DNA of 64,000 nucleotides. Source: Syncephalis fuscata S228. Its lineage: Eukaryota > Fungi > Zoopagomycota. The translations under genes were made by a program, and so were the position numbers. Below are positions 2,040-55,717 of the stretch, piece after piece. The notes below the pieces were generated by a model that was not told the DNA's origin, did not search any database, and saw only the letters and a program-made list of their open reading frames with translations. The first letter of the stretch is position 1. Every line of letters begins with the position of its first letter. The stretch spans positions 310,001 through 374,000 of the forward strand of contig JAHLTZ010000006.1 of the NCBI GenBank assembly GCA_025786725.1, read 5' to 3'.

Positions 2040-2450
2040 TAAAAATAATCAATTTTGGTCTAATATAACTTGGTTCTATTAAACACGGAGCTAGATGATG
2101 AAAAATATTAAATAATAAAAATCTTTAGTAGTTTATTGTGATTTGGCGGTCAAATGGCTACATTTGATATATATTCCTACATTTAAACTAAACATTCAAT
2201 TTATTGAATATGCTGATGGCGGTGAATTACATTAAAGTCTAAAATACTCATCATCGTAGATTTATTATCCAATATGCACATATCCAGTATGCATATATAC
2301 TCTATTCATTTATATCATTTCCATCTATTACACACTACTGTATGCTATTTTATAACATAGTGAATACATTCTATTTATTATACAAATTAATACACTCCAC
2401 TCGCTCCACTCGCTACGCTGTATATTCATTATATTGTATGCTATTTATCG
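2040..2450. repeat. Dispersed AT-rich repeat family copy (inverted relative to 3620-3990)
   Basis: Aligns by eye as reverse complement of 3620-3990 and in the same orientation as 7040-7270; boundaries approximate. Confidence 0.65.
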
Positions 2451-3619
2451 TATAGCGCATAAGAGCTATGCAACACCATTGTTGTTTTGATTCTAGATTA
2501 TTATTAAATAAGTGTTTTTTATGTTTTGGTGCTTTTGGCATCGGAAAGGCGCTGTGCATTAACACCATTTGTGCGGGCGCTTGAATGGCCATATTGGTAC
2601 ACTGTACCTTTAGTACTGTAGATTTGACATAGATATTATATACTTTATATTTATAGAGTGTTGTTATATATTGTTATACAGTATACTGGCCACACTACAT
2701 CGATTGGCGTTGTCCATTTTACCCTAGTTTATCTTTAAAGTTGGCCCTTCATTACACTTTTTGCTAATGACCATATTACACAGTCACAGTTGGCATATTG
2801 ATAAAGTTAACAGTAAATTAACGAATATATATACTGCAAATCCGATTGGTTCTGCGTACTCGCATGACAATTCTGGCTATAATAAACCAATAAAATAAAA
2901 TGTCTAAATATTTATTGTTTTTATTTAGGATTGTATATGCATATCATAGCAATATTGGTCAAATATTGGTGAAAATCGTTAAATATAAATATAAATTTGT
3001 TTATTTATCGCTATGATTTGTTTATTATGCTAGTTTGTCGATTGGTGTATAGTATACTGGCTACTGGTTGTCAATCTGGCTTATTCTAGTGCAGTTTGCA
3101 GTCATTGCAGTGATTTCAGCTAATGACCAGTCAGTATGGTCCTTGCAGGTCTTACTCGTATATCAGCTGGGTATTTTGTTTGTTTTACGCCGCGTATGCA
3201 TCGATTGCATTGCCCGGGTTGTTTCTGGCTATTGAGCTATGTAATGGTACGCTTTATTCGTTCTATTTCACTTATATTGGCCTCAATGTACACAGCACGC
3301 CACTACATCACTTCCGTTTTTGTACCACCTTCCTAATATGGAGTATTGCCGTGACTCGGTTTAACATTCAACTCCAGAGCCCGTAGTAATACAGCCACCC
3401 ATTGGGCCATTTCCGGCTGACCTTGCCATTACTGTGGATACGCATTGTTTTGCTTGATCAACACCAAAGCCATTGCTAATTGACAATTGCCGGGTTGTCT
3501 AGCAGACGGTTACAATAATTGATTTGTTAATAATTAGCCTGGTGCAAAAATAAACAGATTTTGGATAGAGGAAAGATGGGTGATCATAGAAAACATAAAA
3601 AGCGGTGTCAAAGTTAAGT

Positions 3620-3990
3620 GCATATAATGCAATGAGTGGAATGAATAAAGTATATTAAACATATAATAAATAGAATGTGTTTAGTATATTATAGAATGAT
3701 ACATAGTAGTGTGGGACAGAATGGGAATGATATAGGTAAACGGTGGATATATGCATACTGGATAACGAATCTATGATGACAAGTATTTGATGACTGATGT
3801 CACTCACCACCCATCATCATGTTCAATAGATTGGGCGTCATTAGATGTTGGTCATTTGTCCCCTAATCATAATATAATTTAATGATTTAATGGTTTAGTA
3901 AAAATGATTACTCGGTCCCATGTTTAATAAAATAAACGTTTAGTTTGACTGCGCCAATGCTGTCAAACAAGTCAATTGGCACCAATCATA
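3620..3990. repeat. Dispersed AT-rich repeat family copy
   Basis: Core ATATGCATACTGGATAA...GTATTTGATGA...CACTCACCACCCATCATCATGTTCAATAG recurs with variation at 9880-10060, 32220-32350, 53500-53750 and inverted at 2150-2450 and 7040-7270. Confidence 0.75.
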
Positions 3991-4769: not shown

Positions 4770-6508
4770 AATGGTGATTAGTGTGTTAGCGGCCGGCTAC
4801 CAAGCAATATAACAATCAATGTTATATTGATGACTTTAAATTTAGTTCACTAACTTACTAACCTGTATTGATAATTACAAATTTATATCATAAATAAAAA
4901 TCACCAAATTGTTTTAGTGTGCTAGCGGCCGGCTACACAACATTACAACATACTAACTTTATATGTATTGTTTTATATTTAGGTACTTGGACACTAACAC
5001 TAACACTTGTTGATTATTATAGATTTTAGATAGCCGAACACCGACACCAACATCAACATCAACACCAACACAACACCGGCACCAACATCGACACCAACAC
5101 CGGCACCAACATCAACACCGGCACCAACACCAACACCAACACCGACATCAACATCAACACCGGCACCAACACCGACACCAACACAACACCGGCACCAACA
5201 CCGACACCAACATCAACACGGGCACCAACACCAACATCGGCACCAACACAACACCGGCACCAACACCGACACCAACATCAACACGGGCACCAACACAACA
5301 CCGGTACCAACACCAACACCGACACCAACACCGACACCAACACCAACATCAACACCAACACCAACACAACACCAACACCGACACCAACATCAACACCAAC
5401 ACCAACATCAACACCAACACCGGCACCAACATCAACACCAACACCGACACCGACATCAACATCAACACCAACACCAACACCGACACCAACACAACACCGG
5501 CACCAACACCGACACCAACATCAACACGGGCACCAACACCAACATCGGCACCAACACCAACACCAACACCAACACAACACCGGCACCAACATCGACACCA
5601 ACACCGGCACCAACATCAACACCAACATCAACACCGGCACCAACACCAACACCAACACCGACATCAACATCAACACCGGCACCAACATCGGCACCAACAC
5701 CAGTACCAACATCAACACCAACAGCAACATCAGCACCAACACCAACATCAACATCAACACCGGCACCAACATCGGCACCAACATAACACCAACACCGACA
5801 CCAACACAACACCGGCACCAACACCGACACCAACATCAACACCAACACCAACACCAACATCGGCACCAACACCAACACCGACATCAACATCAACACCGGC
5901 ACCAACATCGGCACCAACACCAGTACCAACATCAACACCAACAGCAACATCAGCACCAACACCAACATCAACATCAACACCGGCACCAACATCGGCACCA
6001 ACACCAACACCGACATCAACATCAACACCGGCACCAACATCGGCACCAACACCAGTACCAACATCAACACCAACAGCAACATCAGCACCGACACCAACAT
6101 CAACACCAACATCAGCACCAACACCGACATTAACATCAACACCGGCACCAACATAACACCAACACCGACACCAACACAACACCGGCACCAACATCAACAC
6201 CGGCACCAACACAACACCAACACCGACACCAACACAACACCAGCACCAACATCAACACGGGCACCAACATCAACACGGGCACCAACATCGGCGCCAACAC
6301 CAACACTAACATTATTATTGTTATTTAGATTTTAGATAGCCGGCCACGGACACCTGACGTAAGTATTATTATTATTAATAGCCGGCCGCTAGCACACTAA
6401 AACCAAATACAAAATATTAATTCAGGACAATTGTCTACTAACGTACTAACATTGTATTTATTATTTTAGCATTGTAGGTAGCCGGCCGCTAACACACTAA
6501 TCGCCATT
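4770..6508. repeat. Two nested inverted-repeat pairs (32 bp outer, 25 bp inner)
   Basis: Outer 4770-4801 vs 6477-6508 (31/32 complementary); inner 4911-4935 vs 6379-6403 (25/25). Confidence 0.9.
5034..6307. repeat. AC-rich hexamer array (ACACCA/ACATCA/ACACCG/GCACCA) with higher-order blocks
   Basis: About 1.27 kb of 6-bp periodicity with recurring 5-bp units that shift the frame. Confidence 0.95.
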
Positions 6509-7039: not shown

Positions 7040-7450
7040 AACTATTTTTAATAACATCTAACCTATTGAACATGACGATGGGTGGTGAGTGACATCAATC
7101 ATCAAATACTCATCAGCATAGATTCGTTATCCAGTACGCATATATCCACCATTTACCTATATCACTCTCAATATGCCCACACTACTATATATTATTCTAT
7201 GATATACTAAACATATTCTGTTTATTATATGCTACAATATACTTCGTTCAGTCCACTTATTGCATTATGTGGGTTATAGTTTCAACAGCGCTATTTATAC
7301 TTGTCTATTGTGCATTTATTCTACTTTATATTAACCTATTGTATAGTACCAACACGTTATTTGAAACTGTTATTTATTTAATACTAGTTTGGTTACTAAT
7401 AAATTTAAATTATTACGTTTATTTGTTCATGCATATATGTAACATGCAAT
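7040..7450. repeat. Dispersed AT-rich repeat family copy
   Basis: 7060-7270 is the reverse complement of 3620-3830; 7260-7450 resembles 9515-9705. Confidence 0.75.
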
Positions 7451-7752
7451 CATTTGATAAACAAATTAGTTAATGCAAATTGACTATAGCTTTGATGCTA
7501 GTAGGGCAGATCAATGAATATTTACATTAATAACAAGTTCAAGCGAAATAGGAACATGATGTATTAATAAGTATGCAAATAAAAAAAAGCTAAAGATAAA
7601 ACAGCGTAAACAGCAACAACATAGTACTGTAATGATGATATATGCGTACTAAATAATAAATATACAATAATAAATATTTAAAAAATTAATACTATTTAGC
7701 ATTCAGTTTCATGTTTAATAAAGCAGATATGTAGTTAGTTGCATGAAAAATA

Positions 7753-9507
7753 CTTAGCGCAAATGCTGGCACATAATGCTTAGCACAAATGCTGGCACAT
7801 AATGCTTAGCGCAAATGCTGGCACATAATGCTTAGCGCAAATGCTGGCACATAATGCTTAGCACAAATGCTGGCACATAATGCTTAGCGCAAATGCTGGC
7901 ACATAATGCTTAGCACAAATGCTGGCACATAATGCTTAGCGCAAATGCTGGCACATAATGCTTAGCGCAAATGCTGACACATAATGCTTAGCACAAATGC
8001 TGGCACATAATGCTTAGCGCAAATGCTGGCACATAATGCTTAGCACAAATGCTGGCACATAATGCTTAGCGCAAATGCTGGCACATAATGCTTAGCACAA
8101 ATGCTGGCACATAATGCTTAGCGCAAATGCTGGCACATAATGCTTAGCACAAATGCTGGCACATAATGCTTAGCGCAAATGCTGGCACATAATGCTTAGC
8201 GCAAATGCTGGCACATAATGCTTAGCGCAAATGCTGGCACATAATGCTTAGCGCAAATGCTGGCACATAATGCTTAGCGCAAATGCTGGCACATAATGCT
8301 TAGCGCAAATGCTGGCACATAATGCTTAGCGCAAATGCTGGCACATAATGCTTAGCGCAAATGCTGGCACATAATGCTTAGCGCAAATGCTGGCACATAA
8401 TGCTTAGCGCAAATGCTGGCACATAATGCTTAGCGCAAATGCTGGCACATAATGCTTAGCGCAAATGCTGGCACATAATGCTTAGCGCAAATGCTGGCAC
8501 ATAATGCTTAGCGCAAATGCTGGCACATAATGCTTAGCGCAAATGCTGGCACATAATGCTTAGCGCAAATGCTGGCACATAATGCTTAGCACAAATGCTG
8601 GCACATAATGCTTAGCACAAATGCTGGCACATAATGCTTAGCGCAAATGCTGGCACATAATGCTTAGCGCAAATGCTGGCACATAATGCTTAGCGCAAAT
8701 GCTGACACATAATGCTTAGCGCAAATGCTGGCACATAATGCTTAGCGCAAATGCTGGCACATAATGCTTAGCGCAAATGCTGGCACATAATGCTTAGCGC
8801 AAATGCTGGCACATAATGCTTAGCGCAAATGCTGGCACATAATGCTTAGCGCAAATGCTGGCACATAATGCTTAGCGCAAATGCTGGCACATAATGCTTA
8901 GCGCAAATGCTGGCACATAATGCTTAGCGCAAATGCTGGCACATAATGCTTAGCGCAAATGCTGGCACATAATGCTTAGCGCAAATGCTGCACATAATGC
9001 TTAGCGCAAATGCTGGCACATAATGCTTAGCGCAAATGCTGGCACATAATGCTTAGCGCAAATGCTGGCACATAATGCTTAGCGCAAATGCTGGCACATA
9101 ATGCTTAGCGCAAATGCTGGCACATAATGCTTAGCGCAAATGCTGCACATAATGCTTAGCACAAATGCTGGCACATAATGCTTAGCGCAAATGCTGGCAC
9201 ATAATGCTTAGCGCAAATGCTGGCACATAATGCTTAGCGCAAATGCTGGCACATAATGCTTAGCGCAAATGCTGGCACATAATGCTTAGCGCAAATGCTG
9301 GCACATAATGCTTAGCGCAAATGCTGGCACATAATGCTTAGCGCAAATGCTGGCACATAATGCTTAGCGCAAATGCTGGCACATAATGCTTAGCACAAAT
9401 GCTGGCACATAATGCTTAGCGCAAATGCTGACACATAATGCTTAGCACAAATGCTGGCACATAATGCTTAGCGCAAATGCTGACACATAATGCTTAGCGC
9501 AAATGCT
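7753..9507. repeat. 26-bp minisatellite TGCTTAGCGCAAATGCTGGCACATAA, about 67 copies
   Basis: Nearly homogeneous head-to-tail units; variants GCGC/GCAC and CTGG/CTGA; no spacers. Confidence 0.98.
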
Positions 9508-9879: not shown

Positions 9880-10060
9880 ATAATATGTCTAGTATATCAT
9901 AGAATGGAAATGATATAGGTAAATAGAGTATATGCATATTGATAATAAATCTACGATAATGCGTATTTGATGATTGGTGTCACTCACTACCCATCATCAT
10001 GTTCAATAGGTTGGATGTTAATAAGTTTTGCCATTTGATTACCAAATTGCAATGAATTAT
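9880..10060. repeat. Dispersed AT-rich repeat family copy
   Basis: Matches 3670-3870 in the same orientation. Confidence 0.7.
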
Positions 10061-11679
10061 TAATAAATTGTTTATAAAAAAACTGCTTATTAAATGTGAA
10101 ATAATGCAAGTAAATCATTATCATGTTGCTATATGGCAGCCGTGTTTTTCTAGCAGCAGTTACCGATCAAATTTAATAATCCTATAATGGAAAATATTTA
10201 ATAAAATATAAGCAATGTGCTATTATTTTCTTAACTATAAAATGAAGGTAAGACAATAACAAAATAATAAATAAATAAGTGGTATAAGTGTGATGATTAT
10301 ACGATATTTTTTATTGTTTATATTTTAAAATCATTTTACTAAATGTAGAAGTTATTGCTTTATATGCAGACCTATATTCGAGAGCGTAAGCGACAGTATA
10401 AGCATATACATCGACCATAAATATACAGAATAAAGCCAAAGCATTTAATTTTATATTACTAAAAATATACGAATTTTTTTTAAAGTTTGAGACTATAGTC
10501 AGGTATTTAGTTATAAATAAACAAATGAACCCAAAAGGCCATTGAATCGAACGTGCAACTCACATTAAGTCATGTCAACAATAGCGATTATTTTAAAGAT
10601 ATTATTATTATTATATGATGTAGGCAGAGAATATCACATGAAACGCATTATAAATAAGATATTACTAAATATACAGCTTTGCAATGAGTTATATATGGAC
10701 TGACACTTGCACATTAAGACCAGAGCCGGTAGATATGCTATGCATTGCCATAACCCGTTCAGAGCCGGTTGTGTTTAATAGATTTGATTTATGTGTATAA
10801 CTCAGTGTATATACACTGTGGTGTATACAGTACAATTGATTTACGTGATGTTACAATGGAACAGTCGGCTGAATCTGTGCTTGGGTACAGTATTTTATTA
10901 GTAAAACTACATATATTCAACATTTAACAGTCGACATTGATAATCAACTAAAATACTGATTGTATACGCAACAAGTAATATTACATTGTGTTAAAAATGC
11001 ATTTTTTGTTCTTTAGGCAATAGCCATAGTTACAAGTTGAATGGATGTGTGAGTCAATCAGTATATTTTGATAAGAAATTGCAACTAGCCTATGCATAGT
11101 AGTGCATATTTGTAAAGGATACAAGTTCAATGTACTAGTGTTGTTTTTGCTTCGGCGTTAAGCGTTGTTCGGAATGCATGTGGATATTGTGGGCTGTATT
11201 TGTCGGTGAAAGCAACAGCAAAGACGTAGTGTGCATCGTCACTATTTCCGCAACTAATAGATTTAGTTTGCGCCACATGGTCGAATTGAGTTACACAATA
11301 CAAGGTAATAGGTAAGTTTCTACCAAAGACGTAATGAATCTGTAATATTGCCACATCGTCTGTGTAATTACCGAACAAATTGAAATAAAGGCTGGGAAGC
11401 ATGATATTACATTATCGATATGTTGGTATATGTATGCATCAAGCCACCATGTGAATGTATTGTTATTATTGGTTTACATCGCACATCAATGGTATTGTTT
11501 ATACAACGTAGTATTTCATATATCAGCATAATCCTAGACTTAAATAGTTTATACAATACACACAAATAACTAGCAATATCATCACACTCTAATTTCTGGA
11601 AAATACCTACTACTATCTATTTTATACTAAATATTATATTGTCTATTCTACTTGTTTGCTTTAACAAATCAATATTACC

Positions 11680-17754: not shown

Positions 17755-17859
17755 AGGTATTACCAATAACATGGTGTATACACAAAGGGATGATGCCAAT
17801 AATAAATTTGTTTTATTTTCATTTGAACAGCTAATAAATTATAATGGGGAATTACTGTA

Positions 17860-18457
17860 CTTTGACTTTCACAATTTCATTTATCCATTTCACTCCTCAA
17901 CACTTTTAGTTACAATCAAACACCCATTCATTACTATAACATGTATAATATTACATCCAACATTAATTAATTCATATGTAATTATCAATACAATAATGTA
18001 ATTAATTAGTTATTTTTATTATTGCGTTAATATATATACATTGTCATTATGATATTAATTGTTCAAAATGCCATTTATTTAGTCAATTGGCTATAGGAAA
18101 AGTGGTTGTTTAATAAACGACTTTTATAATAATTATATTGATATTGACCTTACATCACAAATATACCCAAAATGCAACAGTAGAATATTAGAAAATATAA
18201 AAAACCATTTAGATGCAATAATCCATGTTGTATGTAGATCCAACAACAGCAAATGCGGAATGACATGGAATTACAATTATATGGTTTCTATTAATATTCG
18301 ATCAATCTTTCTATACATGGCCAACAACAACAATAATCGCCTCATGAATAGCAAAGTAGTTAAATGAAAGCATTATAATTATGTTTGTTGTGCAATAGCA
18401 GCATGAGTTCAATTAAAACAAATTTTGCTTTGAGGACTCCAAATATGGGAGTCAAAG
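17860..18457 (+). mobile_element. Non-autonomous TIR element with Fanzor C-terminal relic (copy A)
   Basis: TA|CTTTGACTTTCACAATTT ... AAATATGGGAGTCAAAG|TA. ~18149-18367 translates LTSQIYPKCNSRILE...IHVVCRSNNSKCGMTWNYNYMVSINIRSIFLYMANNNNNR. Confidence 0.8.
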
Positions 18458-18832
18458 TAAAATTCAAGCCATGACATACATCAATTTAAATACAGCTGTT
18501 AAATAAATAACTATTTATATAAATGACGATATCCATACTTGATGGAACAATAGTAACGTTAACGTTAAATGAAACAATTAAGTCATGGTTTAACATTTAA
18601 TAATCTCTCCTTTCTAAATATGGACAACGACGACTTGACCCATCGTCTTTCGCTATAATCTTTCTTGTTCTTGCTCTCTCTCTCTCTCCACTCTCCTACT
18701 GACTTCCTTACTTATTTGGCCGTTTACTGCAGCAGTCTATGCACCATCATTACTTGCTTTTTTTATTAAAACTAACTGTTATTAAATTGCATCTAAATAA
18801 CACCAATTCACACACCTGCGTCGATATTTAGT

Positions 18833-31441: not shown

Positions 31442-32219
31442 ACACAGCAATGAATGAGCACTATGCACTTTAAATAATAAACAAATGTTTTTTGTATAAC
31501 TTTGGTTACTGTTACGTACATTTTATATACTGATTTCTATTCAATTTTTTATTATACTCGCTATTATACTGAATATATGTTCTATGATAATGAGTAGTTT
31601 TGGTGGTAAAATGCTTTTATTCTTAATTCACTATTGCTTCACTTGTTCTATGATGTACTGACATGTTGGGTAGATTGACTTTTATTATTCACACTCCATT
31701 TATTAATGAATTAAACTCGGCTGTTTATAAATATTGACTGACAGGCTCACATCTCACAATCTACGTCATCACATTTCCTTTCTCTTTCTTCACACTTGAT
31801 AACATGTAACATGCATATACTTGTACACTCCATATATACCATCTAAATAGTGTCAGTAGTTGACTGACTACTAGCTATATACAATACTATTTACACTATG
31901 TACTTGCATTGCTCTTTTGTAATCTGACCTTTTTTACAAATCACTTTCTTTACTTTGATCATTGAAATTAATAGATTTATCAGCATAGTAATTACAATTC
32001 CGGCTTGTTTTGTGTTATTTTGAATATAAGCTACAAAAATCTTGCTATATACTTTGTTTTTTGTTATAGATTGTCATTGCAGATTATCTGGCAACAGCAT
32101 GTGCAATCTTGAACGTAGTAGATCGCACCTTTGCATTGTACAATTACTGTATTTATTATATTTGCTTTTACTTCTCCGCTTATAAACCGATATAGAAGAA
32201 TAAAAGATAATGTGTTAAT

Positions 32220-32350
32220 ATATGTGTACTGAATATATGCACATTGACTAATAGATCTACAATAATAAGTATTTGATCTTTAATATCATTCACCACCCAT
32301 CGTTATGTTCAATAGATTTAATATTATCAAATTTAGTCATTTGATCTCCA
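32220..32350. repeat. Dispersed AT-rich repeat family copy
   Basis: CATTCACCACCCATCGTTATGTTCAATAGATT matches ~3800-3832. Confidence 0.65.
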
Positions 32351-32527
32351 AACTATATCAAGTTGTTGAAATAAGCAATGTAAACGTAATTGTATGGAAT
32401 ATAGCTGACTACAGCGTGTTTAATAATTTATAATGCTCAAGTAAATAGATGTAGCAAATATAAAGCATTTGCGTAAAATAAAGATATACTACTATTATTT
32501 TATTATTATCAGTAACTCATCACATTG

Positions 32528-40557: not shown

Positions 40558-40835
40558 CTTTTATTAAAATAAGAGCTATTTTACTTTGTTCCTTTAGCTT
40601 CAAACTGGGGCAAAAAGATCCATAACTCGAATAATAAATCATCAATTAGTTTTTACTACTGAGAAGTGTTATTTGTTGTAGTGTCACATCAACTCCAATT
40701 GAACTAATTGGAGATGAATCAGTCTGCACTATTTTCAATATCTGATATCAGTGTTAATAAAATTTAAATAGTATTTCATGTTACTTACAATAAAATACTA
40801 TAACTTAATTACGATGTTGATGCGACAGTGTCAGT

Positions 40836-41230
40836 TTAATTTCTTATAATAGTAGGTGGTAAGAAATTAAAAGGCCTTGGTTCGCCACTGGCCATTGTAC
40901 TGAATATACTGTGCATGTTTCTACTGGCATTAACATCACGCTGCCATACCTTACAACAATTATTGCTTTGGCAAACAAGTACGCTATGCATTGTGCTGTT
41001 GTGTTTTTGCAAATGTAAATTTGCCATCTCCTTTTTCTTGCACTTGGAACAGACTTTGATGTATTGTATTCGTCAATATCTACAATCACCAAAATTCCTT
41101 CTTGCTCAGCAGTTTTGAGCATCTTTCTGCAACGATTGGCCAGTACAGCAACCTTGCCTTTTATAGAAATGGCAAATCGGACAGCTCAAAAGCAATAAGT
41201 GGAATTTTATCATCAAGTGACTGAATAGGT
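40836..41230 (-). pseudogene. Fanzor1 (TnpB-like) C-terminal relic (copy D): RuvC-II, zinc finger, RuvC-III
   Basis: KIPLIAF...KGK...LVIVDIDEYNTSKxCSKC...HSVLVCQSNNCCKVWQRDVNASRNM...RP, with two frameshifts; no RuvC-I seen upstream. Confidence 0.88.
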
Positions 41231-41459
41231 AGAGGCTATGTGCTAGTGTAAATGTTAATAAATCTTGATCCATATTATTGTTACTGTAAAGTATTCAAAG
41301 CATTACAATTTGATATTTAATGCCATTCACCATCCAGTTCCATGTTTAGTAGAACAATAAATGTGTAGTTTAATCAAGCAAAGGATGTCAGCTTTGATCT
41401 TTTGGTACTGAATTATATGAGTTTACTAATGAATTATTTATTATTAGTAAACTATTTTA

Positions 41460-41935
41460 CTTTGGCTCTTAGATTTTATTTACTCATTTCACTTCCTTTT
41501 TCTTAATGCTTTTAAACACAACTAAACATTCATTCATCACTATAGTATGTATAATATTATATCTAATATGAATTAATTCATATGTAATTATCAATACAGT
41601 AATGTAATTAATTAGTTATCTTTATTATTGCTTTAATATATATATATATATTGTCATTTATTTAGTCAGATTGGTTATAAGAAAAGTGGCTGTTTAATAA
41701 ACAACTTTATAAGAATTAATTAATATCGACCCTACATACAATATGCTCAAAATACAATAGTAGAAATTAGAAAATAAAAGAAACTATTCAGATGCAATAA
41801 TCCATGCTGTATATAGATACAATAACAACAAATGCAGAATGACATGGAATTACAATCATATGGCTTCTATTAATATCCAATCAATCTTTCTACACATAGC
41901 CAACAACAACAATGATCAACCTCAAATGTTTCAAA
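41460..41935 (+). mobile_element. Non-autonomous TIR element with Fanzor relic (copy B; right end missing or degenerate)
   Basis: Starts TA|CTTTGGCTCTTAGATTT; colinear with 17860-18345; encodes IHAVYRYNNNKCRMTWNYNHMASINIQSIFLHIANNNNDQP. Confidence 0.78.
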
Positions 41936-42267
41936 CTCAAATAGTATGTTACATTTTTATTTAAATGTTTAATATTATTACTGATACAATGTTCTTTACA
42001 TTTAATTTAATTTAATGGAAATGATAATGTTATTATATATATTAATATTTATTGAAAATAATCATTTAAACACAATTTAATCAAATCAAATCATTACAAT
42101 AGATTGTGTAAAATGATTTACTGCACCGGGGGATTAAAGTAAAGTTCAACCAAAATTTATTTATTTATACTCTTCTGTCTCTTAACATCTTTGCCGTCTT
42201 ATCACTATCGTGGTTATTGCTGTCCATATCTTCATCTACGCGCAGCTAGTTCATTGTCATCGCTATC

Positions 42268-42995: not shown

Positions 42996-48770
<5,775 letters not shown>

Positions 48771-48928
48771 TGTTGTCAAAAAGGTCTAAGCAAAAACAAC
48801 TATAAAAAAGAAAAAGACGCCTTGAAGCGGATACAAATAATGTAAAATTTTAGTTATCATATTTCTTTTTTTCTATTTAATTTAATCTGCTTTAAATCAA
48901 TTTTATTTAAATTGTATTCAACTTTTTA

Positions 48929-49668
48929 CTTTGACTCCCACATTTAGAGTTCTCAAAGCAAAATTCGTTCCAATTTAATTTATGTTGTTCTGCGCAGCAA
49001 ACATAGTTATAATGTTTTTATTTAACTACTTTGAAATCCACGAGGCCGATTATTGTTGTTGTTGGCCATGTATAGAAAATTGATCGAATATTAATAGAAG
49101 CCATATAATTGCAATTCCATATCATTCCGTAGTTGTTGTTATTGTTACTACGTACAGTGTGGCTTCTTTGCGTCTAAATGGTCTTTTATATTTTCCAATC
49201 TTCTACTGTTGCATTTTGAGCATGTTCGCGATGTAAGATACTCGTCTATGATGACAAGAAGGTAGGACAACTAGCGTTTCTGATGTTCACCATTGTTTTG
49301 AGCATTGTTGGTATCAACTTAATAGGCGCAATTACTTTGCCAATCATTAATGAAGCAAATGACCTTCACCATATGCAATAATAATAGGCTAAGTGTCTTT
49401 ACCAGGAAGATCTTGTAGCGACAGTTGTAATCAGAATATACGGCATGCCGTTGAGGTTACTTGAACAGGTGTTAATGTAAAATAATATAAATAAAGACTA
49501 AGAATTAAATAATGTTATTTATTGATGTTCAAATACACATGTTATTTATATCGTTATATTTGGTATTATTGTGTAATCTATTACTGAATAAAATATCTAA
49601 AAAGAAGATAAACGACAACGATAAGAAAAAGGCGACGAAATCAGTAAATAAAAATGTGAGAGCCAAAG
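48929..49668 (-). mobile_element. Non-autonomous TIR element with Fanzor relic (copy C)
   Basis: TIRs CTTTGACTCCCACATTT (48929-48945) and reverse complement of 49652-49668 CTTTGGCTCTCACATTT (15/17), TA on both sides. Minus strand encodes PIIIAYGEG..F..LMIGKVIAPIK...LVIIDEYLTSRTCSKC...WNCNYMASINIRSIF with frameshifts. Confidence 0.85.
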
Positions 49669-49940
49669 TACAACAGCTTCAAATGATTAATTAACCAACG
49701 CTATAATGTCTATTTGATATAATACACCACAATCTATTCATCTGTTACGATTATTACTACTATTTCTACCACTGCTACTACTGCATATCAATAGCTATAC
49801 AGAGACAGTATAGTATGAAAGAAGTGAATTAGTTACATTTCTTTTTACTTGACCAGATCTGTAGATCTATACGTGTATATATACTTATTGAACAGTGCAT
49901 TCCTTGAGCAATATTTGTTATATATTTCTTTTCATTTAAT

Positions 49941-50662
49941 ATGCTGTCATCTAACATTTCATTGTCAAGTATTAGTAGCTCGTTAGCTACTACTAATGTT
50001 ACAAGCCGCGGCATAGCACCAAGCCAAGTTGCTTATCCAGATTGGGAGAGTTTAGTAAGTCGTTATCGCTATTGTGTTTAATAATACAAGTTGACTAATT
50101 AATTACTATAATAATAGGAACAACAGGTACCACCAGTCAATTGGACCTAAATCAACGACATGCACCACAACTAGTATTACCAGGTCTGTATATCGGTTCG
50201 TTGCAAGTATCCCGTTCGCTACCAGAGCTTCGGGAACGAGGCATTACACATATTATTCATGCTTGTGACTCGGATGGACGGCCCTTACCCTCCTCTCTTA
50301 CTACTATGCACAGCTACAACACTAGTGACAATATTATAAACAATACTGGCATGCCTTTGTTGTCTGATGGAGGCCCAGTAATTGAATTAAAGACTATCGA
50401 CATTTATGATCGAGGCCGTCATTCGTTGGCTGCCTTTTCTGATGCATCACAATTCTGCCGACTAGCATGGGCCAATGGCAGCAATGTGCTTATTTACTGC
50501 TTAACCGGCATTGACGCAAGCCCCGTCATTGCTGTAGCCATTATTATGGAAATGACGGGTATGGCTTGTGTTGATGCTATGCACTGGGTTCAAATGCGTC
50601 GACGATGTACCAATATTCGAGGTGTCTATCTTCGCTTACTAGAGGCAAGTTATTCAATACGT

Positions 50663-50693
<31 letters not shown>

Positions 50694-51047
50694 GGAACAA
50701 CACTAATATATTTATATACAGGAATATGAACCTGTATTATATGCACAACAAACAACAATGAATGAAACAGCATTAGCTATCGATCCATCATTGCATGGGT
50801 CACTACAACAACAGTCATCAAAACGGTAAGTTGTTGTTAATAAGCTTGTATTTTGTTTATATTTGCATTAATGCCATACTGAAGTAGTCTAAGAGACCAT
50901 AATAATGACCATGAAGACGATGAAACAATGGGTCACAGCCATCGAAAGAATCTCTTGCTTGATTCTACTGCTACTGATTCTAATGCAAACTCGGCCTCGC
51001 CTATTACTATTTGTACACTTCCTATTAACTGGTCAGGTCCAAATTAG
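49941..51047 (+). CDS. STYX-like dual-specificity phosphatase-fold protein (copy 1), multi-exon; 3' end approximate
   Basis: QLVLPGLYIG, GITHII, NVLIYCLTGIDASP, VQMRRRC; 1-nt deletion near 50149 relative to copy 2. Confidence 0.8.
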
Positions 51048-51186
51048 CTTTTTTGTTTCATTTATCCAATATGACTGCTACTATACTAATATATATATAT
51101 ATATACATTATTACCAATAATTTTTTTATTCCATTACTGTTATTACTAACTATACGTCATGATTTTTATATAAATGACGTAGATAT
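49952..51186 (+). repeat. ~1.24-kb near-identical direct duplication (partner 54221-55453)
   Basis: Identical by eye apart from about five substitutions and small indels. Confidence 0.95.
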
Positions 51187-52295
51187 AAATTTATTATTAT
51201 TATTGACAATTTATTTAGCTGATTGTTTATTTATTTTTGTTAAGGTTATTAATTACCATTAAACAATTCATTAACTATTTATTATGAGTTGATGGTCAAA
51301 TAACTACTTTAATAATATTTGCGTAATTGAACTACACATTGTTCTATTGAATATAGGAACGGGTAGTGAGTTATATCAGTCATTGAATCTATTATTATGG
51401 CTATTCTGTATAAACATATCTATTGTGAATACCACCATATCGTTACATTCTCGCAGTATTGCAATATTGATATTTGCATTGTCCTTATTCTCTAACTTTT
51501 TACAGTCCCATATTGACCTATTTGGTGTTAGCTAGCTTAACGATTATTAGCTATAAATTATTAACTAAATACATATTTTAATAAATCAATAAAGTTATGC
51601 ATACTCATATTGTTTCATTCGTCTGTATGGTTCAATAAATAAAATGAATCAAGGTGTATTGGTAATTGAGCCAGGGACAAACAAGCGACCGTTATGAACA
51701 GTACGTGATTACTAATAAATAAATAATTTAGAATAGGATGAATATACAATGGAAAGTATACAATTAATAGCGTTGAGTCTATAATGCATAAAACCTTACC
51801 ATTGATGTACAATATCAACGAACTTTGTAAAATGGTATTATTCGTTATTTACAATAGATACTTCCATCATAAAAATGTACTATTTTATTTCCAATAGCTA
51901 TGATCACAATAAAGCATTTAACTTTACATATAATATTTGAAATGTCAATAGAGCGTTAGTTTACAAATCTAATTGTAAAAGCATTGCGCCCACACTGTAA
52001 AAGCATTTAAAAATATTGAAAAGTTATTCCAGTGTAATAGTGTGTAAAAAAGATGTAAAACTAGCTACAATCGTAACAATATCTTTATGTAAAATAAAAC
52101 ATTATATGATATTTCGCACAATTATACTAAGTAAATTATTAATCAAATTCAAATATATTATATCCAATTATTTATTGCCTCATCTACCTTTACATAACTT
52201 AATTTTTTAATTACTAAAATAATCAAAATTAAGCGCGATCTTCCCGCTGTAGCTTAAACAAAACAATATGCATCGCCAATTGCAAAAAAACAAAG

Positions 52296-53399: not shown

Positions 53400-53750
53400 C
53401 AAAGCGATATATAAAAGAATGAATATAGAGTGAAAGGTGTCTGAATAGCGATGTTAAAGTTATAGTGCATACAATGCAATGAAGAGAATGACTGAAGTAT
53501 ACTGATACATATAAACAATAGAATGTGTCTAATATATCATATAATGGTATATAATAGTGTGGGATATAATATGAATGATATAGATGAATAGTAGATATAT
53601 GCATACTGGATAATAAATTTATGATGACAAGTATTTTGGTTATTGATGTTATTCACCACTCAGTTCAATGTTCACTAGAACAAATGCCTAGTTTAAATGT
53701 GTAAATGTTATTAACTATAGTCGTTTGATCGTCAAATCATGCCAAATGTT
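53400..53750. repeat. Dispersed AT-rich repeat family copy
   Basis: ATATATGCATACTGGATAATAAATTTATGATGACAAGTATTT matches ~3747-3788. Confidence 0.7.
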
Positions 53751-54210
53751 AATAATCAATTAGTCTAAATATGGTAGTTATCTAGACAAACAACTACAAC
53801 AATAGCAAGCGCTGGCGTTACTAGCAATGGCTAAATGTATTGGTCCCAACTGTCAGTCATGGACATATTTTGCACAAACTATTGCCACCTTGTGATCTAG
53901 TATATAATTTTAAACCATTTGCACGCGTTAATAAAGCAATTAACTTTTATTTTGCTCTGAATTTAATACACATATTTCTCAATTTAAAAGCATAGATTTT
54001 TAAGCTTTTTTATATTTAAAATAGCTAACAATAGCTTAAAAGACATCAAGTTTACCTTTTTGAAGACAGAAGAAAAGTATAAGCTCTTTACAAAAAACAA
54101 AAATACTTAAGCTACGTTTAATGAAAATTAAATATTTTATAAGGTGGCTAATTTCTATTAATTATTTATAAATCATATAACTATGGGATAAACAAAAAAC
54201 AAACAAAAAT

Positions 54211-54932
54211 ATGCTGCATTTAACATTTCATTGTCAAGTATTAGTAGCTCGTTAGCTACTACTAATGTTACAAGCCGCGGCATAGCACCAAGCCAAGTTG
54301 CTTATCCAGATTGGGAGAGTTTAGTAAGTCGTTATCGCTATTGTGTTTAATAATACAAGTTGACTAATTAATTACTATAATAATAGGAACAACAGGTACC
54401 ACCAGTCAATTGGACCTACAATCAACGACATGCACCACAACTAGTATTACCAGGTCTGTATATCGGTTCGTTGCAAGTATCCCGTTCGCTACCAGAGCTT
54501 CGGGAACGAGGCATTACACATATTATTCATGCTTGTGACTCGGATGGACGGCCCTTACCCTCCTCTCTTACTACTATGCACAGCTACAACACTAGTGACA
54601 ATATTATAAACAATACTGGCATGCCTTTGTTGTCTGATGGAGGCCCAGTAATTGAATTAAAGACTATCGACATTTATGATCGAGGCCGTCATTCGTTGGC
54701 TGCCTTTTCTGATGCATCACAATTCTGCCGACTAGCATGGGCCAATGGCAGCAATGTGCTTATTTACTGCTTAACCGGCATTGACGCAAGCCCCGTCATT
54801 GCTGTAGCCATTATTATGGAAATGACGGGTATGGCTTGTGTTGATGCTATGCACTGGGTTCAAATGCGTCGACGATGTACCAATATTCGAGGTGTCTATC
54901 TTCGCTTACTAGAGGCAAGTTATTCAATACGT

Positions 54933-54965
<33 letters not shown>

Positions 54966-55453
54966 GGAACAACACTAATATATTTATATACAGGAATATG
55001 AACCTGTATTATATGCACAACAAACAACAATGAATGAAACAGCATTAACTATCGATCCATCATTGCATGGGTCACTACAACAACAGTCATCAAAACGGTA
55101 AGTTGTTGTTAATAAGCTTGTATTTTGTTTATATTTGCATTAATGCCATACTGAAGTAGTCTAAGGGACCATAATAATGACCATGAAGACGATGAAACAA
55201 TGGGTCACAGCCATCGAAAGAATCTCTTACTTGATTCTACTGCTATTGATTCTAATGCAAACTCGGCCTCGCCTATTACTATTTGTACACTTCCTATTAA
55301 CTGGTCAGGTCCAAATTAGCTTTTTTGTTTCATTTATCCAATATGACTGCTACTATACTAATATATATATATATACATTATTACCAATAATTTTTATTCC
55401 ATTACTATTATTACTAACTATACGTCATGATTTTTATATAAATGACGTAGATA
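54211..55453 (+). CDS. STYX-like phosphatase copy 2 (duplicate; altered first codons, possibly pseudogene); span is the duplicated block
   Basis: Exon 2 intact (VNWTYNQRHAPQLVLPGLYIG) but the ATG at 54211 is out of frame. Confidence 0.7.
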
Positions 55454-55717
55454 TGAATGCTCACGCTGTCTATAGTCATATGATCGGTGTAAATAGGCGG
55501 CGTGTTGACCACATGCCATAACTGCACCCCACCCTCCCCTTTGCTTTTATAAACAGGCTAATACATTGTAGGGATGTATGTGTGTGTATGTGTACACGGA
55601 GTGGTACATTTACATATTTCATATTCTATTCGTTCAACCATCTGCACACACCAAACACACATCCCAGCAGGTACTTACACAATAAAAACAAGAACAACAC
55701 CACAGAAATGTGATGTA

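What the first reader, a model, noticed from the sequence alone, without database searches (positions are those of the whole stretch)
48929..49668. Hidden family of TA-flanked TIR elements carrying Fanzor (eukaryotic RNA-guided nuclease) relics
Seen: three related elements at 17860-18457 (+), 41460-~41935 (+) and 48929-49668 (-). They share a 17-bp terminal sequence CTTTGRCTCYCACATTT bordered by TA; A and C have both ends. Each keeps only the C-terminal coding part; copy C shows IAYG..F...GK..AP, IDEYLTSxxCxKC and WNxxxMASINI. None is in the ORF track. Established: these motifs are RuvC-II, zinc finger and RuvC-III of TnpB/Fanzor1, and fungal Fanzor1 is known inside TA-targeting Tc1/mariner-type TIR elements, including ORF-less ghost copies. 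Inference: a Fanzor1 transposon family in this lineage; three copies in 64 kb suggest high copy number and possibly an intact parent elsewhere.
Basis: partly seen in the sequence, partly recalled or inferred. Interest (0 to 1): 0.9.

Follow-up and report, generated by a model that had tools for sequence, protein, structure and literature searches.

The report
Dead Fanzor mini-transposons, 8-bp target duplication
These are decayed, high-copy jumping-gene remnants in a fungus that parasitises other fungi; each keeps the tail of an RNA-guided DNA-cutting enzyme gene (Fanzor1) and usually its guide-RNA scaffold, and they sit next to a one-sided target motif that may record how the enzyme once helped them spread.

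Summary
The three copies and their Fanzor1 motifs are real. They belong to a family of several hundred decayed copies (about 88% identical to consensus) in a Zoopagales fungus. The TA lies inside a 29-bp imperfect TIR that starts GG and ends CC, 12 bp further out, and the target duplication is 8 bp (z=6.2), not TA. So the carrier is not a TA-targeting Tc1/mariner; its ends fit Merlin or a short-TIR Mutator, unresolved. No intact Fanzor or linked transposase was found. Behind the relic lies a three-stem omegaRNA-like scaffold whose middle hairpin is shared, with compensatory changes, by Mucoromycota Fanzor1 loci. Left flanks carry an orientation-locked motif, (A)TT^AA (T in 40/46 versus 7/29 at the mirror position), resembling a TAM. 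Transfer from a Mucorales host is not shown. The scan noted this family many times elsewhere in the same genome. Verdict: dead new member of a known kind, with one testable oddity.

The parts
48917..49680 (-). Copy C: non-autonomous Fanzor1-relic element, 764 bp, long 5' variant
49652..49680 (-).
49681..49691 (-). Left flank of C: decayed 8-bp target duplication preceded by the ATT^AA motif
49025..49480 (-). Frameshifted relic of about the last 145 codons of Fanzor1 lineage A: IAYG strand, RuvC-II E (IDEYLTS), zinc finger, RuvC-III; RuvC-I and the N-terminal lobe are deleted. Upstream limit approximate
48917..49036 (-). Putative omegaRNA scaffold (three stems, the third using the right TIR 48917-48945); decayed in this copy
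17848..18469 (+). Copy A, 622 bp, short 5' variant; TIRs 17848-17876 and 18441-18469
18131..18364 (+). Copy A Fanzor relic (zinc finger and RuvC-III remains; RuvC-II E lost)
18352..18469 (+). Copy A omegaRNA-like three-stem region (fold z -2.6)
40572..42151 (+). Copy B composite, 1580 bp: outer left end, second Fanzor relic, inner left end, lineage-A relic, alternative 3' region, right end
40860..41206 (-). Relic of a second Fanzor lineage (B): IDEYNTSK, CSKC, WQRDVNASRN; back-to-back with the lineage-A relic
41448..41476 (+). Inner, tip-degraded left TIR of the lineage-A part of copy B
41740..41937 (+). Copy B lineage-A Fanzor relic
41926..42151 (+). Alternative 3' region (R2) and right TIR, shared with many genome copies and with a third Fanzor lineage in L024

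Best explanation
A dead, MITE-like family derived from a cut-and-paste DNA transposon that carried Fanzor1. Shown: 29-bp imperfect GG..CC TIRs, 8-bp (sometimes 7-bp) target duplication, internal deletions that removed RuvC-I and everything upstream, a retained C-terminal relic and a 3' three-stem region homologous to Mucoromycota Fanzor1 3' regions, neutral decay, no intact Fanzor found. Inferred: a DDE transposase (Merlin-type about 0.4, short-TIR Mutator about 0.4, other 0.2) moved the copies in trans; each copy, like Spu-1 ghost loci, could make an omegaRNA running through the right end into the flank; Fanzor made in trans cut empty sites. The one-sided (A)TT^AA flank motif most likely marks the TAM/target preference of that system (about 0.5). 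The same TIR type picked up several Fanzor lineages, and neighbouring copies formed composites whose inner ends lost their tips.
For: Ends and TSD: 8 bp z=6.2, all other lengths 2-12 at most 1.8; 10 of 22 independent two-ended copies at least 6/8, 2 with 7 bp. Copy number: 105 left ends, 34 right ends, 219 TIR cores at up to 1 mismatch with controls 0, 0, 3; 747 protein candidates. Fanzor identity: only PDB hit is Guillardia theta Fanzor1 (E 0.02); PF07282 E 6e-4 for the window piece, below cut-off; 34 hits down to E 4e-12, named ones from Thamnidium, Rhizomucor, Rhizopus, Parasitella, Blakeslea, Cunninghamella, all eight tested over the PF07282 cut-off. Scaffold. Decay. Flank motif. Precedent: ghost loci and a conserved CA before the left end in Spu-1 (PMC10432273); TIR inside a three-stem reRNA (PMC10711439).
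Against: No transposase could be tied to these ends: IS1595/Merlin, DDE_3 and hAT models found nothing (the hAT search had no working control), and the 15 MULE hits are not beside the ends that were listed (lists are incomplete). No small-RNA data; the scaffold is no better conserved than the rest of the element. Half of the two-ended copies show no recognisable TSD. The flank motif could come from the transposase alone.
Confidence: 0.8

Rival explanations
1. One reading: a TA-targeting Tc1/mariner-type Fanzor element ending at the TA. A historical form of it: the ancestor had Tc1-type ends and the family later gained about 7 extra bases per side and a new mobiliser.
For: The closest Fanzor relatives sit in TA-flanked TIR elements: Umbelopsis and Mucor TA|CAGTC and three ENA contigs TA|CTGTATTTT, which resembles the inner part of this TIR (TA-CTGTACTTT). 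Mucorales Mariner-Fanzor families are published (PMC3627910 supplement).
Against: The mobile unit here includes the outer GG..CC tips and is flanked by exact 8-bp repeats in L002, L006, L046, L059; the right side reads TT, not TA, at the matching place; no DDE_3 hit. The resemblance is about 10 AT-rich bases.
Confidence: 0.08
2. Carrier is a short-TIR Mutator (MULE), making this a sister of the published Mucorales MuDR-Fanzor elements ROr-4, PBl-3, MCi-4.
For: MULE is the only DDE family detected in the genome (15 hits); MULE TSDs are 8-11 bp and TIRs 14-500 bp (PMC6446971); ROr-4/PBl-3/MCi-4 have 31-42-bp TIRs and no transposase.
Against: Those elements make 9-bp TSDs; here 9 bp scores z 1.5-1.6. 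Their printed termini do not match this TIR. No MULE hit lies at a listed end; a SWIM-like stretch in a neighbouring module gave no Pfam or Atlas hit.
Confidence: 0.4
3. Carrier is a Merlin/IS1016-type element, a superfamily not listed among Fanzor carriers in the papers read.
For: Merlin TIRs are 24-462 bp, begin GG, give 8-9-bp TSDs, can be imperfect, and occur in Mucoromycota (PMC8101967). Carrier lists in PMC3627910, PMC10530073 and PMC13565253 omit Merlin; no relevant paper holds both words.
Against: No IS1595-type transposase in the genome by two models; the TIR core was not found at a Merlin end in that paper's supplements.
Confidence: 0.4
4. Copies were inserted by a nick-primed, retrotransposon-like route, since TT^AA with the duplication starting at the nick and joined to the 3' end is what L1-type endonucleases leave (own knowledge).
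For: One-sided motif; first base after the right end is A in 26/29 against 31/46 at the left 8-bp position (p 0.05); some 7-bp TSDs.
Against: Fixed 5' ends, TIRs, no A-tail, internal-deletion subfamilies that keep both ends, interior flips between TIRs (L014, L024). The end-anchored searches favour copies with ends.
Confidence: 0.07
5. The Fanzor came by horizontal transfer from Mucorales hosts of this mycoparasite.
For: Host genes match Thamnocephalis and Syncephalis; named Fanzor relatives are all Mucoromycota; the RNA hairpin is shared.
Against: In the tree lineage A is sister to, not inside, the Mucoromycota clade (94/79, about 150 decayed residues); at least four Fanzor lineages are present; no other Zoopagales Fanzor was available for comparison.
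Confidence: 0.3

Closest known systems
Spu-1 / ghost Spu-1 elements of Spizellomyces punctatus (Saito 2023, PMC10432273)
   Same: Fanzor1 TIR element with many ORF-less or partial copies, about 30-bp TIRs, 3' RNA region overlapping the right end, conserved bases outside the left end only
   Different: Spu-1 has a TA TSD and 19 full-length genes; here 8-bp TSD, GG..CC ends, no intact gene found, a C-terminal coding relic kept in the copies examined
Mucorales MuDR-type Fanzor1 elements ROr-4, PBl-3, MCi-4 (Bao and Jurka 2013, PMC3627910)
   Same: Short TIR, long variable TSD, no transposase inside, related host group
   Different: 9-bp TSD, different termini, intact 1165-1245-aa Fanzors, few copies
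MCi-2 (Mucor circinelloides, PMC3627910)
   Same: One-sided AT-rich pattern at the target duplication, slightly variable TSD length
   Different: No TIR, 11-12-bp TSD, Crypton fragment
Merlin/IS1016 superfamily (PMC8101967)
   Same: GG-start short TIR, 8-bp TSD
   Different: No IS1595-type transposase found; no Fanzor cargo reported in the papers read
Fanzor1 of Mucor circinelloides (P0059), Parasitella (P0060), Umbelopsis (P0066), Thamnidium (P0001, P0037)
   Same: 38-50% identity over the relic; shared hairpin with an ATAACA loop behind the stop
   Different: They lie in longer, mostly TA-flanked TIRs and are largely intact

Membership tests
Fanzor1 | C-terminal TnpB-type zinc finger with TS-xx-C4 and RuvC-III | tested here: met
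   second cysteine pair decayed in most copies
Fanzor1 | RuvC-II glutamate about six residues before the zinc finger (PMC13565253) | tested here: met
   IDEYLTS in C; E codon in 29 of 50 copies
Fanzor1 | RuvC-I aspartate, REC/WED lobe, intact ORF | tested here: not met
   deleted in all copies read; searches found no upstream part in the assembly (one search has no positive control). Hence relic of a Fanzor1, not a working one
Fanzor1 | Closest relatives are eukaryotic Fanzor1 rather than IS607-type Fanzor2 | tested here: met
   no Fanzor2 reference was in the tree
Fanzor1 | Structured omegaRNA scaffold between stop codon and right end | tested here: inconclusive
   three-stem fold z -3.1 to -1.25 and cross-genus covariation of one hairpin; expression as a small RNA not testable (only assembled RNA contigs)
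Fanzor1 | RNA-guided cleavage next to a TAM | not testable with these tools
   needs biochemistry; flank motif only
Tc1/mariner | TA target duplication directly outside the TIR | tested here: not met
Tc1/mariner | DD(34)E/D transposase | tested here: not met
   PF13358 no hit; other Tc1/pogo models not tried
Merlin/IS1016 | TIR of 24 bp or more starting GG | tested here: met
Merlin/IS1016 | 8-9-bp TSD | tested here: met
Merlin/IS1016 | IS1595-type DDE transposase with these ends | tested here: not met
   (partner may be lost, so not filed as Merlin)
Mutator/MULE | 8-11-bp TSD, G-start TIR | tested here: met
   the 9 bp of the Mucorales examples is not met
Mutator/MULE | MULE transposase between these TIRs | tested here: inconclusive
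   MULE hits exist but their flanks could not be read
hAT | 8-bp TSD plus hAT transposase and CA/TA-type termini | tested here: inconclusive
   TSD fits, termini do not (own knowledge of the consensus); PF05699 search had no working control

The most novel reading that the evidence does not exclude
A Merlin-type (previously unlisted) carrier of Fanzor1 in which the TAM lies just outside a long, variable target duplication (ATT or ATTAA), so the guide must begin inside the 3' duplication instead of after it; the filled site is spared because only 8 bases match, and homing into empty alleles, driven by omegaRNAs from non-coding copies, enriched TAM-adjacent insertions to about 87%.
Probability: 0.2. 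Interest if true: 0.65.

Novelty: new member of a known kind. Interest (0 to 1): 0.42.

Why it matters
Fanzor1 relics and ghost elements are known in fungi, so the basic finding is expected, and a dead family gives no new tool directly. It extends Fanzor1 to Zoopagales (no such report in the papers searched) and adds a carrier with GG..CC ends and an 8-bp duplication. Published structures put the 3' duplication inside the RNA scaffold and the 5' one in the TAM (PMC13565253), which cannot hold for a variable 8-mer. Hundreds of fossil insertions with a one-sided flank motif are a natural record of how Fanzor1 copes with long duplications and whether it drove its carrier in a eukaryote. The shared hairpin also locates candidate omegaRNAs for several largely intact Mucoromycota Fanzors.

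Tried and rejected
TA as target duplication: rejected. Intact parent: none among the best-scoring hits; the longest stop-free frames (274 aa at C68:536972 and C338:6189) could not be read. Partner transposase: PF12762, NF033547, PF13358, PF05699 blank; PF10551 hits not linked. TIR pattern in JGI metagenomes: one chance match in a small virus-like contig. Neighbouring modules R3 and LM: no Pfam, Atlas or Fanzor match. TIR words in the supplements of two papers: nothing relevant. Selection on the RNA region: not seen. Proteins were searched as stop-free pieces by reference; in one script relic pieces were read with X at breaks for the tree.

Full report
Observation. Copies A, B and C align at 81-84%. 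Copy C holds the quoted motifs in three frames. So the elements are real.

Host. Window genes are spliced eukaryotic genes. A single-exon acid phosphatase matches Thamnocephalis and Syncephalis best among named proteins, so the host is a Zoopagales fungus, a group of mostly fungal parasites (own knowledge). The assembly has 29.4 Mb in 371 contigs.

Family size and age. Copy C finds 43 scored matches of 600 candidates; an 81-aa relic piece finds 747 candidates, 150 scored. There are 105 left ends, 34 right ends and 219 TIR cores within one mismatch, with reversed controls of 0, 0 and 3. Near-complete copies average 88% identity to consensus, C>T and G>A changes dominate, and no part is better kept than the rest. 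The family is old and decaying neutrally.

The ends. The left end starts GGAGCTACTGTA and the right end finishes TACAGTTCAACC, giving a 29-bp imperfect TIR with GG..CC tips. Outside the tips an 8-bp repeat stands out: z 3.3 in the first set and 6.2 in the end-anchored set, with all other lengths from 2 to 12 at 1.8 or less. Of 22 independent two-ended copies, 10 match at 6/8 or better and 2 fit 7 bp; L002, L006, L046 and L059 are exact. The true extents are A 17848-18469 and C 48917-49680. This rules out a TA-targeting Tc1/mariner as the present carrier.

The protein relic. A stop-free piece from a sister copy hits only Guillardia theta Fanzor1 in the PDB (E 0.02). PF07282 is hit weakly by the window piece (E 6e-4, below cut-off). 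An exhaustive search gives 34 relatives down to E 4e-12; the eight tested pass the PF07282 cut-off, and the named ones come from Mucorales. The relic covers about the last 145 residues of a protein of about 900. The RuvC-II glutamate survives in 29 of 50 copies; RuvC-III is D in 20 and N in 54 of 79. With a 912-aa Mucor Fanzor as query, all 50 best genome hits start at residue 767 or later and residues 330-765 find nothing. No intact parent was found in this assembly.

The RNA scaffold. The 118 nt from the stop to the right end fold into three stems, the last using the TIR (z -3.1 in L005, -2.6 in A, -1.25 in decayed C). This matches the three-stem, TIR-including architecture described for Fanzor1 RNAs (PMC10711439). 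The middle hairpin, with an ATAACA loop, recurs behind the stop of Fanzors from Mucor, Parasitella, Umbelopsis, two ENA contigs and, weakly, Thamnidium. In a ten-row alignment 91% of cells pair and 5 of 7 pairs show two-sided changes; I anchored that alignment on the loop, so it leans towards the structure. An RNA run with spliced contigs holds contigs of the family, which shows neither a small RNA nor a level.

Copy B and composites. B is larger than reported: 40572-42151. It has an outer left-type end, a relic of a second Fanzor lineage on the minus strand (41206-40860), an inner left end with a degraded tip, the lineage-A relic and an alternative 3' region. Back-to-back or nested forms recur in many loci, and on contig C57 two copies appear to bracket a 3.3-kb module (a 310-bp gap was not read). 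At least four Fanzor lineages are present in the loci read. Earlier scan notes describe the same.

Target motif. In 46 independent left flanks the bases at -11 to -7 read A, T, T, A, A, with T at -9 in 40 of 46 (p 1.5e-12 against local background); the duplication starts at the first A. The mirror position beyond the right end has T in only 7 of 29 (Fisher p 6e-8). A symmetric transposase target would be palindromic (own knowledge). Spu-1 elements show a similar left-only CA that is part of the TAM (PMC10432273); the Parasitella Fanzor TAM is ATN (PMC11423790). I infer a TAM or a co-evolved, oriented target preference. With a variable 8-mer between motif and element, the guide would have to start inside the 3' duplication, unlike the arrangement summarised in PMC13565253. 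This is untested.

Carrier. GG tips, a 29-bp TIR and an 8-bp TSD fit Merlin (PMC8101967), but two IS1595 models find nothing in the genome. MULE transposases are present, MULE TSDs span 8-11 bp, and Mucorales have short-TIR MuDR-Fanzor elements with 9-bp TSDs, but no link to these ends could be read. Tc1 and hAT models were blank. I leave it open at about equal odds. The nearest Fanzor relatives lie in TA-flanked TIRs, some of which begin like the inner part of this TIR, so a Tc1-type ancestry of the cassette is possible.

Origin. Lineage A is sister to a Mucoromycota clade (94/79), not nested in it. Transfer from a host fungus is possible but not shown.

Limits. End-anchored searches favour copies with ends. 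Pattern lists were cut at 100 rows.

Verdict. A genuine, dead, high-copy Fanzor1 ghost-type family with corrected ends; a new member of a known kind. The one-sided target motif beside a long duplication is the part a specialist would want to test. Interest 0.42.

Noticed in passing
window 40860-41206 (-): Second Fanzor lineage relic inside copy B, with RuvC-II E and RuvC-III D still readable; closest named relative is a Cunninghamella Fanzor
   Followed up: yes
L053:1648-2012 (+) and L024:540-972 (-): Two further Fanzor lineages next to lineage-A copies; the L024 one is followed by the R2 3' region and a family-type right end
   Followed up: partly
window 7749-9507: Tandem array of a 26-bp unit, about 68 copies, 98% matches
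   Followed up: no
window 5037-6311: 6-bp tandem array (AACACC-like, about 215 copies) within ORFs 5462-6154 and 5754-6212, probably a repetitive protein
   Followed up: no
window 49938-51190 and 54208-55458: 1.25-kb direct duplication at 98.8% identity, covering a dual-specificity phosphatase exon; recent duplication or assembly artefact
   Followed up: no
window 2139-2411, 3586-3843, 7049-7308, 9890-10074, 32218-32352, 53444-53739: Another dispersed repeat of about 260 bp, six copies at 70-84% identity, also in many fetched loci; ends not defined
   Followed up: partly
L084:5657-10373, L086:5923-10343, L091:3092-6866, L083:4537-9350: Mucor, Helicostylum, Umbelopsis and Cunninghamella Fanzor genes lie between TIR-like repeats of 86-143 bp; in Mucor the conserved RNA region ends well inside the right TIR, so its guide would be element-internal
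   Followed up: partly
L083-L092, 3' of the Fanzor genes: A GGTAAG motif closes the conserved 3' region in most of these Fanzor loci, and the same word occurs in the published PpFz1 RNA; absent from lineage A
   Followed up: no
L079:128-343 (module LM): Cys/His spacing reminiscent of a SWIM finger in a repeat joined to many copies; no Pfam or Atlas hit
   Followed up: partly
window 47879-48631 (-): Largest RNA polymerase subunit gene (Rpb1 domain 1, probably RPA1) starts about 150 bp downstream of copy C's right end
   Followed up: no
L089: 13.5-kb JGI contig that looks like a small polinton-like virus or virophage; chance pattern match, unrelated
   Followed up: no
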